DNA from: Octopus sinensis
Lineage: Eukaryota
Length of the DNA: 64,000 bases
Assembly (NCBI RefSeq): GCF_006345805.1
Contig: NC_043003.1
Coordinates: forward strand, 13,454,001 to 13,518,000
Direction of reading: 5' to 3'
Position numbers and translations under genes: made by a program. The notes below the pieces were generated by a model. That model did no database searches. It was not told the origin of the DNA and worked only from the letters and a program-made list of their open reading frames with translations. Within the stretch, counting starts at the first letter, position 1; each line of letters begins with the position of its first letter. Positions 21,790-22,798 of the stretch are shown here, piece by piece.

Positions 21790-21906
21790 AAACGGGCGTC
21801 TTTCAGTTTCCGTCTACCAAATCCACTCACTAGGCTTTGGTTGGCTCGAGGCTATAGTAGAAGACACTTGCCCAAAGTTTCATGTGGTTGGGAAGCAAGC
21901 TTCTTA

Positions 21907-22317
21907 TTTCTTTACTGCCCACAAGCGGCTAAACATAGAAGGAACAAACAAGGACAAAGGGATTAAGTCGATTACATCGACCCCAGTGCATAACTGGTAC
22001 TTATTTAATCGACCCCAAAAAGATGAACGGCTAAGTCGACCTCGGCGGAATTTGAACACAGAATGTAGCAGCAGACGAAATACCTATTTCTTTACTACCC
22101 ACAAGGGGCTAAACACAGAGAGGACAAACAAGGACAGACAAACGGATTAAGTCAATTATATCGAGCCCAGTACGTAACTGGTACTTATTTAATCGACCCC
22201 AAAAGGATGAAAGGCAAAGTCGACCTCGGCGGAATTTGAACTCAGAATGTAGCGACAGACAAAATACCGCTAAGCATTTCGTCCGGAGTACTAACGATTC
22301 TGCCAGCTCGCCACCTT
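21907..22317 (-). mobile_element. SINE family A with duplicated tail (3' part of 5S chimera)
   Basis: Head AAGGTGGCGAGCTGGCAGAATCGTTAG at 22317, two tail modules. Confidence 0.85.
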
Positions 22318-22331
22318 TTTTTTTTCTTTTA

Positions 22332-22450
22332 TGCTTACAGCACCTGGGTTTCCCAAGCGGTCACCCATCTAAGTACTAACTCGGCTCAACGTTGCTTAAC
22401 TTCGGTGACTGGACGAGAACCGGTGCTTTCAACGTGATATGGTCGTAAGC
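22332..22450 (-). rRNA. 5S rRNA-derived copy
   Basis: GCTTACGACCATATCACGTTGAAAGCACCGGTTCTCGTCC...GGGTGACCGCTTGGGAAACCCAGGTGCTGTAAGC, 119 nt, followed by an A-rich tract rather than a T terminator. Confidence 0.93.
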
Positions 22451-22798
22451 TTCTTACCACACAGCAACACGTTTTTAAAGTAAAGGACTAAGCTTTGATT
22501 GGTTGTAATTTTGATGATGTCTTTTGGTTTTTGTCGTTGGTGTTTTGGTCAAAATATTTTTATTTCGGCAAAGTCTAGCATTCTGGTTGGTTGGCTTCCT
22601 GGTGACGTCATTTGTTTATCAAACATTTTCATTCCTTGCTGACCACAGTCAAGGAACAAGTTCTGATTGATTGTAAGTTTTGTGACATCATTTGTTTTGA
22701 TCAAAAATATTTTCCATTTTGGACAAAATATATTTTGGCAGAGTTCAGCGTTCTGCTTGGTTGACTTCCTGGTGGGGGATTTGGTAACCTGTTTGTGC

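What the first reader, a model, noticed from the sequence alone, without database searches (positions are those of the whole stretch)
21897..22470. Second 5S + SINE-A chimera, inserted inside a SINE-B with a TSD
Seen on minus strand: SINE-B head GCTGTGTGG-TAAGAAGCTT, then 5S, A-rich linker, SINE-A, then TAAGAAGCTT-GCTTCCCAACC resuming SINE-B. The duplicate is AAGCTTCTTA at 21897-21906 and 22447-22456. The order 5S then SINE-A matches copy 1, but the linker differs (A-rich versus pyrimidine). Inference: either an undescribed 5S/tRNA composite SINE, or recurrent RT template switching from SINE RNA to 5S rRNA, analogous to mammalian U6-L1 chimeras. Two events in 22 kb suggest it is common.
Basis: partly seen in the sequence, partly recalled or inferred. 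Interest (0 to 1): 0.75.

Follow-up and report, generated by a model that had tools for sequence, protein, structure and literature searches.

The report
5S rRNA fused to an octopus SINE
A full-length copy of 5S ribosomal RNA joined head-to-tail to a complete tRNA-type SINE was pasted as one piece into another SINE in an octopus genome; this is a known kind of retrotransposition chimera, and the kind of fusion thought to give rise to 5S-headed SINEs, here seen in a cephalopod.

Summary
Rfam finds exactly two 5S rRNA copies in the window, at 22332-22450(-) and 236-354(+). Each lies 15-16 nt upstream of a complete SINE-A 5' end, in the same orientation. Copy 2 is 5S, then an A-rich linker, then a 1.8-unit SINE-A dimer. 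AAGCTTCTTA flanks it at 21897-21906 and 22447-22456. Nine other SINE-B heads in the window carry that sequence once, so the empty site is reconstructed. So each chimera went in as one piece.

The two copies are not copies of one composite element. Their linkers are unrelated, their SINE-A parts belong to different subfamilies, and their 5S parts differ by two compensatory base-pair changes. I favour a LINE reverse transcriptase jumping from the 5' end of SINE-A RNA onto 3'-extended 5S rRNA. I could not tell whether either chimera later amplified as a 5S-headed SINE family, because no further octopus copies were retrievable. 5S+tRNA-SINE composites (AmnSINE1, HaSE3) and 5S chimeric retrogenes are already known, and octopus repeat tables already list "SINE/5S". 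This is a new member of a known kind, of moderate interest.

The parts
22447..22456 (-). 5' copy of the target-site duplication of copy 2 (TAAGAAGCTT on the element strand). Its last 4 nt overlap 5S positions 1-4.
   Evidence: Exact 10-mer repeated at 21897-21906. The sequence is single in 9/9 other SINE-B heads.
22332..22450 (-). Full-length 5S rRNA retro-copy (copy 2). 31 of 34 consensus pairs are canonical.
   Evidence: Rfam RF00001, 100.9 bits, model 1-120. Pair count.
22318..22331 (-). A-rich linker (TAAAAGAAAAAAAA) between the 5S 3' end and the AA that starts SINE-A.
   Evidence: Read directly. No similarity to the copy 1 linker.
22085..22317 (-). SINE-A unit 1: complete 5' end (AAGGTGGCGAGCTGGCAGAA), tRNA-like head, body, tail ...GTAAAGAAATA.
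   Evidence: BLAST and alignment to other SINE-A copies; 90.9% to a7. The 5' end matches 22 other heads.
21907..22084 (-). SINE-A unit 2: 5'-truncated unit that starts at GGTATTTCGTCTGC and ends ...GTAAAGAAA.
   Evidence: The same dimer junction occurs in the 5S-less copy at 4822-5239.
21897..21906 (-). 3' copy of the target-site duplication of copy 2.
21560..21896 (-). Host SINE-B, the part 3' of the insertion (GCTTCCCAACCACATG...). It carries an internal deletion relative to other copies.
   Evidence: BLAST of the joined flanks to many SINE-B copies in the window.
22457..22472 (-). Host SINE-B, head fragment 5' of the insertion (...GTGTTGCTGTGTGG).
   Evidence: Alignment with 9 SINE-B heads.
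217..230 (+). Copy 1: 5' target-site duplication TATTTTATAAATAA, followed by 5 extra nt (AATTT, 231-235).
   Evidence: Only two occurrences in the window, at 217 and 587. Null probability about 1.3%.
236..354 (+). Copy 1: full-length 5S rRNA retro-copy. 33 of 34 consensus pairs are canonical.
   Evidence: Rfam, 108.6 bits. Pair count.
355..367 (+). Copy 1: pyrimidine-rich linker (TCTTTCTCTCTTT).
368..586 (+). Copy 1: single SINE-A unit with a complete 5' end (AAGGCGGCGAGC...) and a 16-nt internal deletion. Closest to a4 unit 1 (89.9%).
587..600 (+). Copy 1: 3' target-site duplication. Its TTTT is the first Pol III terminator-like run after 5S position +1.

Best explanation
The element at 21897-22456 is a chimeric retro-copy. 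One complementary DNA was made on two RNAs in succession and integrated in a single target-primed reverse transcription event into a SINE-B.

Proposed steps:
1. A LINE reverse transcriptase that recognises the SINE-A tail (...GTAAAGAAATAG, no poly(A)) nicked the SINE-B head at TAAGAAGCTT.
2. It copied a dimeric SINE-A RNA to its very 5' end.
3. It then jumped end-to-end onto the 3' end of a 5S rRNA that carried a short A-rich 3' extension, and copied it to position +1.
4. The 5' end was joined through GCTT microhomology.

Copy 1 (217-600) is a second, independent event of the same type. It involved a different SINE-A subfamily, a structurally intact variant 5S rRNA and a U/C-rich 3' extension.

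Shown:
- Each unit is bounded by one duplication.
- The empty site is restored for copy 2.
- 5S and SINE-A are both complete at the junction.
- The two copies were not derived from one composite master.

Inferred:
- The fusion arose by template jumping rather than RNA ligation or read-through.
- The linkers are 3' extensions of the 5S RNA.

Such a chimera keeps the 5S internal promoter region. In copy 1 there is no T4 run before the element's end, so it could in principle seed a 5S-headed SINE.
For: - Exactly two 5S copies exist in 64 kb, both full length.
- Both lie 15-16 nt upstream of a SINE-A head in the same orientation. With about 11 SINE-A heads in the window, a 5S 3' end falls within 20 nt of a head by chance about 0.2% of the time, so twice about 3e-6 (my arithmetic).
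- A single duplication surrounds each whole unit.
- 9/9 SINE-B heads show the uninterrupted target.
- No repeat of the 3' flank occurs next to the SINE-A head, and no repeat of the 5' flank occurs after the linker.
- The SINE-A 5' end in both chimeras equals the 5' end of 22 free copies, including the preceding AA. This is the signature of an end-to-end junction rather than an internal switch.
- The linkers are unrelated.
- c1's SINE-A is closest to a4 unit 1 (89.9%) and c2's to a7 (90.9%), against 86.6% to each other. They also carry different diagnostic motifs: GATAAATTAAG versus GATTAAATAAG, and AAACG versus AATCG.
- The 5S parts differ at 14 aligned positions, including two compensatory pairs (2:119 U-A versus C-G; 18:61 U-A versus G-C). 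The probability of two or more by chance is 0.01.
- This genome also holds other SINE-SINE fusions with end-to-internal junctions. These are dimers at 4822-5239 and 21907-22317, and type 1 + type 2 composites at 771-1090 and 7017-7345. Such module joining therefore recurs here.
- The literature attributes 5S-SINE and small-RNA/LINE chimeras to reverse transcriptase template switching (PMC4824008, PMC4758252, PMC3272025, 10.1101/2025.02.02.635956).
Against: - There are only two copies, and no further copies could be fetched. A primary event cannot be told from a daughter copy of an amplifying composite.
- The 14-nt linkers are longer than the few untemplated bases usually seen at template jumps, and neither begins with the U-run expected at a 5S 3' end.
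- Two chimeras among about 11 full SINE-A heads in one window would imply an implausibly high jump rate if every chimera were a one-off. This favours some amplification.
- The partner LINE was not identified. Only a tail-like fragment at 36188-36250 was found.
- The compensatory-pair test is only p about 0.01.
Confidence: 0.5

Rival explanations
1. Both elements are daughter copies of amplifying 5S-headed composite SINE families, with at least two separately founded families. In each master copy 5S and SINE-A became adjacent once, either by an earlier template jump or by SINE-A inserting just downstream of a 5S gene or pseudogene. Pol III then transcribes from the 5S promoter through SINE-A, and the LINE machinery copies the whole RNA via the SINE-A tail.
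For: - Two elements within 22 kb are hard to explain if each is a rare one-off.
- In copy 1 the first T4 run after 5S position +1 lies exactly at the element's end, so a read-through transcript would be a complete composite.
- The copy 1 5S keeps 33 of 34 pairs, with compensatory changes relative to copy 2. This fits a lineage or source under constraint.
- The copy 1 linker (GTCTTTCTCTCTTT) looks like a weak or degenerate Pol III trailer.
- A curated O. vulgaris annotation lists four 'SINE 5S' families covering 9.83 Mb, and an earlier table lists SINE/5S in O. bimaculoides and O. vulgaris.
- The SINE-A dimer of copy 2 is itself a propagating form: 4822-5239 has the same junction and shares unit-2 variants.
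Against: - No third copy sharing either linker was found. About 82 kb of other octopus DNA has 25 or more SINE-A/B copies but no 5S.
- The published 'SINE/5S' labels are automated. They may be 5S rDNA arrays, since the 7 'recent' insertions average about 6 kb.
- Copy 2 now has T4 runs 187 and 247 nt into the unit, though these may be later CpG decay.
- Retroposed 5S promoters are thought to be weak without upstream elements (discussion in PMC3272025).
Confidence: 0.38
2. Two separate insertions happen to abut. Either a 5S retro-pseudogene with an A-tail landed next to an existing SINE-A, or SINE-A landed at the end of an existing 5S pseudogene, inside SINE-B.
For: - The A-rich linker of copy 2 resembles the tail of a poly(A)-primed retro-pseudogene.
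- L1-type LINEs exist in octopus.
Against: - The only duplication encloses both parts. No second duplication lies at the internal junction in either copy.
- The same arrangement and orientation, with 15-16 nt spacing, occurs twice. Chance is about 3e-6 (arithmetic).
Confidence: 0.05
3. The 5S sequences are working 5S rRNA genes that sit beside SINEs.
For: - Both score far above the Rfam threshold, and copy 1 keeps almost every pair.
Against: - They are solitary rather than in an array.
- They are bounded together with SINE-A by target-site duplications.
- No T-run terminator follows the 3' end.
- Copy 2 has three broken pairs, including one in loop C/helix III, and lies inside a SINE-B.
Confidence: 0.03

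Closest known systems
AmnSINE1 and related 5S/tRNA-headed Deu-SINEs (Nishihara, Smit & Okada 2006; as described in PMC4758252 and PMC4824008)
   Same: A 5S rRNA sequence is fused to the 5' end of a tRNA-derived SINE, in the same orientation. The origin is proposed to be a template switch from SINE RNA to 5S rRNA.
   Different: AmnSINE1 is an established multi-copy family with one fixed junction, and it has lost part of the tRNA region. Here 5S is complete (119 nt) and SINE-A is complete including its tRNA-like head. The two copies have different junctions, and family status is unproven. Whether SINE-A has a Deu domain was not tested.
HaSE3 of Helicoverpa armigera (PMC3272025)
   Same: It is a chimera of 5S rRNA with the body and tail of a co-resident tRNA-derived SINE (HaSE1), and it is flanked by duplications.
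   Different: In HaSE3 the 5S head replaces the tRNA head. Here it is added in front of an intact head, with a 14-nt linker.
Chimeric retrogenes: U6/L1, 5S/L1, U6/Alu (Buzdin et al. 2003; catalogue in 10.1101/2025.02.02.635956)
   Same: A small Pol III RNA is joined 5' to the 3' part of a retroelement. One duplication surrounds both. The events are independent and have individual junctions.
   Different: In mammals the 3' partner is usually a 5'-truncated L1 ending in poly(A). The 5S parts of 5S/L1 chimeras are mostly truncated and antisense. Here 5S is full length and sense, the partner is a complete SINE, and the tail is not poly(A).
SINE3 of zebrafish and other 5S-derived SINEs (Kapitonov & Jurka 2003; listed in PMC10946416)
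   Same: A 5S-derived head with internal promoter region sits at the 5' end of a LINE-dependent element.
   Different: SINE3 has no tRNA-derived module. [quoted passage not shown]
Dimeric SINEs with an A-rich linker (for example Alu; from general knowledge)
   Same: Two Pol III-derived modules are joined head-to-tail by a short A-rich linker, as in copy 2.
   Different: The modules are different (7SL-derived monomers), and Alu is a fixed family.

Membership tests
5S-headed composite SINE (SINE3 / AmnSINE1 / HaSE3 type) | 5S rRNA-derived sequence at the 5' end, containing the internal control region (boxes A, IE, C) | tested here: met
   Full-length Rfam 5S match, model positions 1-120, in both copies. 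Promoter activity was not tested.
5S-headed composite SINE (SINE3 / AmnSINE1 / HaSE3 type) | 3' part and tail shared with a co-resident SINE or LINE that supplies retrotransposition | tested here: met
   The 3' part is a complete SINE-A with the family tail ...GTAAAGAAATA(G), shared with 9 or more copies in the window and with O. bimaculoides L009. The partner LINE was not identified.
5S-headed composite SINE (SINE3 / AmnSINE1 / HaSE3 type) | Whole unit flanked by one target-site duplication | tested here: met
   10-bp (copy 2) and 14-bp (copy 1) duplications; empty site restored for copy 2.
5S-headed composite SINE (SINE3 / AmnSINE1 / HaSE3 type) | Multi-copy family whose members share one junction and consensus | tested here: inconclusive
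   The two copies do not share linker, SINE-A subfamily or 5S variant. No other copies were found in 82 kb of octopus DNA or in the metagenome, genome or viral scans. Published tables list SINE/5S in octopus but without sequences.
5S-headed composite SINE (SINE3 / AmnSINE1 / HaSE3 type) | Pol III transcription of the composite from the 5S promoter | not testable with these tools
   Only indirect: there is no T4 run between 5S +1 and the element's end in copy 1, whereas copy 2 has T4 runs at +187 and +247.
Chimeric retrogene made by RT template switching (Buzdin type) | Copies of two different cellular/TE RNAs fused in the same orientation, with the retrotransposition-competent one at the 3' side | tested here: met
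   5S (sense) is 5' of SINE-A (sense) in both copies.
Chimeric retrogene made by RT template switching (Buzdin type) | One target-site duplication around the whole chimera and none at the internal junction | tested here: met
Chimeric retrogene made by RT template switching (Buzdin type) | Independent events have individual junctions and do not propagate | tested here: inconclusive
   The junctions differ between the two copies. Lack of propagation cannot be judged from two copies.
Functional 5S rRNA gene | T-run terminator directly after the 3' end; tandem array or conserved upstream promoter context | tested here: not met
   No T4 run follows either 5S. Both are solitary and lie inside duplication-bounded retro-units.

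The most novel reading that the evidence does not exclude
Octopus genomes may be caught in the act of repeatedly making 5S-headed SINEs. In this reading the reverse transcriptase that moves SINE-A jumps onto 5S rRNA often enough to have founded several independent 5S+tRNA-SINE lineages, thousands of copies in all. These would include a lineage whose 5S head stays under selection for the 5S fold, as the compensatory changes in copy 1 suggest. That would be the first characterised 5S-SINE system in molluscs and a living model for how AmnSINE1-type elements arose.
Probability: 0.2. Interest if true: 0.55.

Novelty: new member of a known kind. Interest (0 to 1): 0.35.

Why it matters
Old families such as AmnSINE1 suggest that 5S-headed SINEs begin as a fusion of 5S rRNA with an existing tRNA-SINE, but those families retain only an eroded junction. 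Here both modules are still complete, the junction is intact, and two independent fusions can be compared, so the founding step can be read directly.

If a genome-wide census shows many such fusions, octopus would offer two things:
- a system in which the rate and rules of reverse transcriptase template jumping by a non-poly(A) LINE can be measured;
- a first documented 5S-SINE in molluscs.

If the fusions are rare one-offs, this is simply the cephalopod counterpart of the chimeric retrogenes known from mammals and fungi.

Tried and rejected
1. A metagenome scan for the junction pattern GGTGCTGTAA-N(4-34)-GAGCTGGCAGAA gave 7 hits. All were bacterial coding sequence, that is, chance matches.
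2. An octopus-type 5S 34-mer gave 0 hits in GTDB genome contigs and in IMG/VR.
3. Exact look-ups of window ORFs (the 61-aa junction ORF and the 213-aa LINE ORF) found nothing on record.
4. A protein search with the antisense ORF that runs through SINE-A, the linker and the 5S 3' end returned only 3 proteins, none with the 5S part. The protein collection therefore holds too few octopus SINE ORFs to serve as a census.
5. I sampled other octopus DNA through P0100 (O. sinensis, L008, 20 kb) and P0121 (O. bimaculoides, L009, 76 kb, of which 14 kb is N). Both hold SINE-A and SINE-B but no 5S. L010 turned out not to be octopus.
6. I hoped to reach orthologous loci through a host gene. The only gene-like sequence, a TMEM165/GDT1 copy, is a frameshifted intronless copy, and its search returned no octopus orthologue.
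7. I searched for the partner LINE through the SINE-A tail. Only a short tail-like fragment at 36188-36250 was found, with no reverse transcriptase ORF upstream.
8. I tried to reconstruct the empty site of copy 1 from paralogous repeats. Its flanks are unique apart from an (ATT)n run.
9. The nested-insertion and functional-gene readings were rejected for the reasons given under the rival explanations.
10. The sub-threshold Rfam microRNA hits across the window are TA/TG microsatellite artefacts.

Full report
**What is there**

The window is AT-rich (about 38% G+C) and SINE-dense. Its two main SINE families also occur in O. sinensis and O. bimaculoides contigs, so it comes from an octopus genome.

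Rfam at curated thresholds finds exactly two RNA genes, both 5S rRNA: 236-354(+) at 108.6 bits and 22332-22450(-) at 100.9 bits. Both cover model positions 1-120. A permissive scan (E<=1) adds no further 5S fragment; everything else is microsatellite noise. ARAGORN finds no tRNA.

**Anatomy of the finding (copy 2, minus strand)**

The order on the element strand is:
- SINE-B head ...GCTGTGTGG
- TAAGAAGCTT (22456-22447)
- 5S (22450-22332, so its first four bases GCTT overlap the repeat)
- linker TAAAAGAAAAAAAA (22331-22318)
- SINE-A unit 1, beginning AAGGTGGCGAGCTGGCAGAA (22317-22085)
- SINE-A unit 2, beginning GGTATTTCGTCTGC (22084-21907)
- TAAGAAGCTT (21906-21897)
- GCTTCCCAACC..., the rest of SINE-B

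Nine other SINE-B heads in the window read GTGGTAAGTAGCTTGCTTnCCAACCACATGG without interruption. Joining the flanks with one copy of the repeat therefore restores an intact SINE-B. Flanks of random pseudo-elements share 10 nt or more in about 1% of trials.

**Copy 1 has its own duplication**

TATTTTATAAATAA occurs only twice in the window, at 217-230 and 587-600. Between the two occurrences lie:
- five extra bases (AATTT)
- 5S (236-354)
- linker TCTTTCTCTCTTT
- one SINE-A unit (368-586)

In both copies one duplication encloses 5S+linker+SINE-A. Neither internal junction carries a second duplication.

Chance adjacency is negligible. With about 11 SINE-A heads in 64 kb, a 5S 3' end falls within 20 nt of a head in the right orientation about 0.2% of the time, so twice about 3e-6.

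**The junction is end-to-end**

Across the window, L008 and L009, SINE-A heads are preceded by (T)AA in about 18 of 22 copies and start GG(C/T)GGCGAGCTGGCAGAA. Both chimeras carry exactly this 5' end. 5S is also complete at both ends. This pattern is expected in two cases:
- the reverse transcriptase ran off the end of SINE-A RNA and continued on a second RNA;
- a read-through transcript covered two abutting complete units.

It is not the pattern of an internal switch.

**Are the two chimeras copies of one composite element? No.**

- The linkers are unrelated: pyrimidine-rich versus A-rich.
- The SINE-A parts carry different subfamily markers. c1 has AAACGTTAGCACGCC and GATAAATTAAG and is closest to the 5S-less copy a4 unit 1 (89.9%). 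c2 has AATCGTTAGTACTCC and GATTAAATAAG and is closest to the 5S-less copy a7 (90.9%). They are 86.6% identical to each other.
- c2's SINE-A is the dimeric form that also exists without 5S at 4822-5239.
- The 5S parts differ at 14 aligned positions. These include two double changes that keep base pairs: 2:119 U-A versus C-G, and 18:61 U-A versus G-C.
- Copy 1 keeps 33 of 34 consensus pairs. Copy 2 has three broken pairs.
- Random substitutions give two or more compensatory pairs in 1% of simulations.

The simplest reading is that the two 5S parts were copied from two different structurally constrained 5S RNAs: a canonical-looking one for copy 2, since decayed, and a variant for copy 1. This is suggestive rather than strong evidence.

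**Mechanism**

SINE-A ends in ...GTAAAGAAATAG(G), not poly(A). Its duplications are 10-14 bp (c1, c2, a4, a7). That points to a LINE that recognises a specific tail. The partner LINE was not found; only a tail-like fragment lies at 36188-36250, with no reverse transcriptase ORF upstream.

I favour this sequence of steps: target-primed reverse transcription of SINE-A RNA, a jump from its 5' end to the 3' end of a 5S rRNA carrying a short extension (A-rich in copy 2, U/C-rich in copy 1), and 5' joining by microhomology (GCTT in copy 2) or with filler bases (AATTT in copy 1).

The literature proposes the same process for AmnSINE1-type heads, HaSE3 and mammalian chimeric retrogenes. This genome also shows other SINE-SINE joins:
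- dimers with the junction AAAGAAATAGGTATTTCGTCTG;
- type 1 + type 2 composites at 771-1090 and 7017-7345 that share one architecture.

**The main rival**

Each copy may be a daughter of its own amplifying 5S-headed family.

In favour:
- Two elements lie in one window.
- In copy 1 the first T4 run after 5S position +1 lies exactly at the element's end, so a Pol III read-through RNA would be a full composite.
- The copy 1 5S fold is well preserved.
- The copy 1 linker looks like a weak trailer.
- Published octopus repeat tables list "5S" SINEs: four families and 9.83 Mb in O. vulgaris, and SINE/5S at 0.03-0.04% of repeat copies in O. bimaculoides and O. vulgaris.

Against, or ambiguous:
- Those labels are automated. 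The seven "recently active" 5S insertions average about 6 kb, which looks more like 5S rDNA arrays.
- No copy sharing either linker could be found.
- About 82 kb of additional octopus DNA contains no 5S at all.

I could not resolve this. I put about 0.5 on primary template-jump events and about 0.38 on daughter copies of composite families. The two are linked, because a family would itself start with such a fusion.

**Comparison with what is known**

5S fused in front of a tRNA-derived SINE is the architecture inferred for AmnSINE1 and its relatives and for HaSE3. Small Pol III RNAs fused 5' of a retroelement under one duplication are the classic chimeric retrogenes.

What differs here:
- Both modules are complete.
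- There is a 14-nt linker.
- The 3' partner is a whole SINE that moves by a non-poly(A) tail.
- Two independent fusions lie 22 kb apart.

[quoted passage not shown] A characterised molluscan case would therefore be new as a member, not as a kind.

**Limits**

- Species identity rests on shared SINEs only.
- The names tRNA-Deu (SINE-A) and tRNA-Core (SINE-B) are taken from published class tables and my recollection of the CORE motif. They were not tested.
- No transcript data, no orthologous loci and no genome-wide census were available.

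Noticed in passing
window 30000-30850 (-): An intronless, frameshifted copy of a TMEM165/GDT1-family gene. It has the ELGDKTFFIAAIMA motif (Pfam GDT1 hit), then the next transmembrane segments and the acidic loop in two other frames. It is probably an old processed pseudogene; the best database identity is only about 62%.
   Followed up: partly
window 771-1090 (-) and 7017-7345 (+): Two copies of a composite SINE. A full type 1 SINE-A unit (tail AAAGAAATAGG) is joined at the same internal point to the body of an older SINE-A type. 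That older type has a different tail, ...CCCCAAAATTTCAGGCCTTGTGCC.AGAGTAGAAAGGA followed by (TAA)n. They share the architecture and unit-2 variants, so the composite itself propagates.
   Followed up: partly
window 4822-5239 (+): A 5S-less SINE-A dimer with the same unit1|unit2 junction as copy 2. It is flanked by an imperfect 11-bp duplication, A(T/G)AATAC(T/C)AATTA.
   Followed up: partly
window 36188-36250 (+): A sequence resembling only the last ~45 nt of SINE-A (TTTGTCCCCTCTGTGTTCAGACCTGTGTGGCCAATAGAGAAACATA), with no SINE-A body upstream. It may be the 3' end of the partner LINE. There is no reverse transcriptase ORF within 4 kb upstream.
   Followed up: partly
window + L008 + L009, SINE-A 5' junctions: About 18 of 22 SINE-A heads are immediately preceded by (T)AA, and the older SINE-A type ends in (TAA)n/(ATT)n. 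This would fit a TAA-repeat-targeting LINE such as the Dong-R4 group, which is abundant in published octopus tables. Not tested.
   Followed up: no
window 15025-15974: A 462-bp unit repeated 2.1 times at 99% identity (Tandem Repeats Finder score 1879), giving two identical 123-aa ORFs. This looks like a recent tandem duplication of unknown content.
   Followed up: partly
window 24200-26700; also 16500-16800, 38480-38560, 41290-41365, 53830-54080: Long TA/TG-type microsatellite blocks. They produce dozens of sub-threshold Rfam 'mir-297 / mir-3149 / mir-1277' matches, which are artefacts.
   Followed up: yes
window 28374-29039 (+): A LINE C-terminal ORF (222 aa) that is 67-70% identical to uncharacterised proteins of a shrimp (Penaeus indicus), a hydrozoan (Clytia) and many unnamed eukaryotic contigs, and 72% identical over half its length to an O. 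sinensis protein. The retrotransposon lineage is unusually widely shared.
   Followed up: partly
window 13612-14828 (-): A LINE fragment with reverse transcriptase (Pfam RVT_1, E 3e-13), followed by a Cys-rich finger and a C-terminal segment with an RTE-like motif (HLHWYGHVVRMDED...GRGRPRKTWDEVV).
   Followed up: partly
window 17309-17563, 23232-23606, 31323-31802, 55290-55556, 58812-59129, 62124-62699: Another interspersed repeat family, recognisable by recurring ORF motifs (FLRLDALPNANHS.SVVGAFYVPPA on one strand, CRWHVKSTIRSWPFASS...GVVGIRKGIQP on the other). Not classified.
   Followed up: no
window 589-592: The only T4 run downstream of copy 1's 5S start lies in the target-site duplication, right after the SINE-A tail. 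This particular insertion could give a complete Pol III composite transcript by accident of its landing site.
   Followed up: partly
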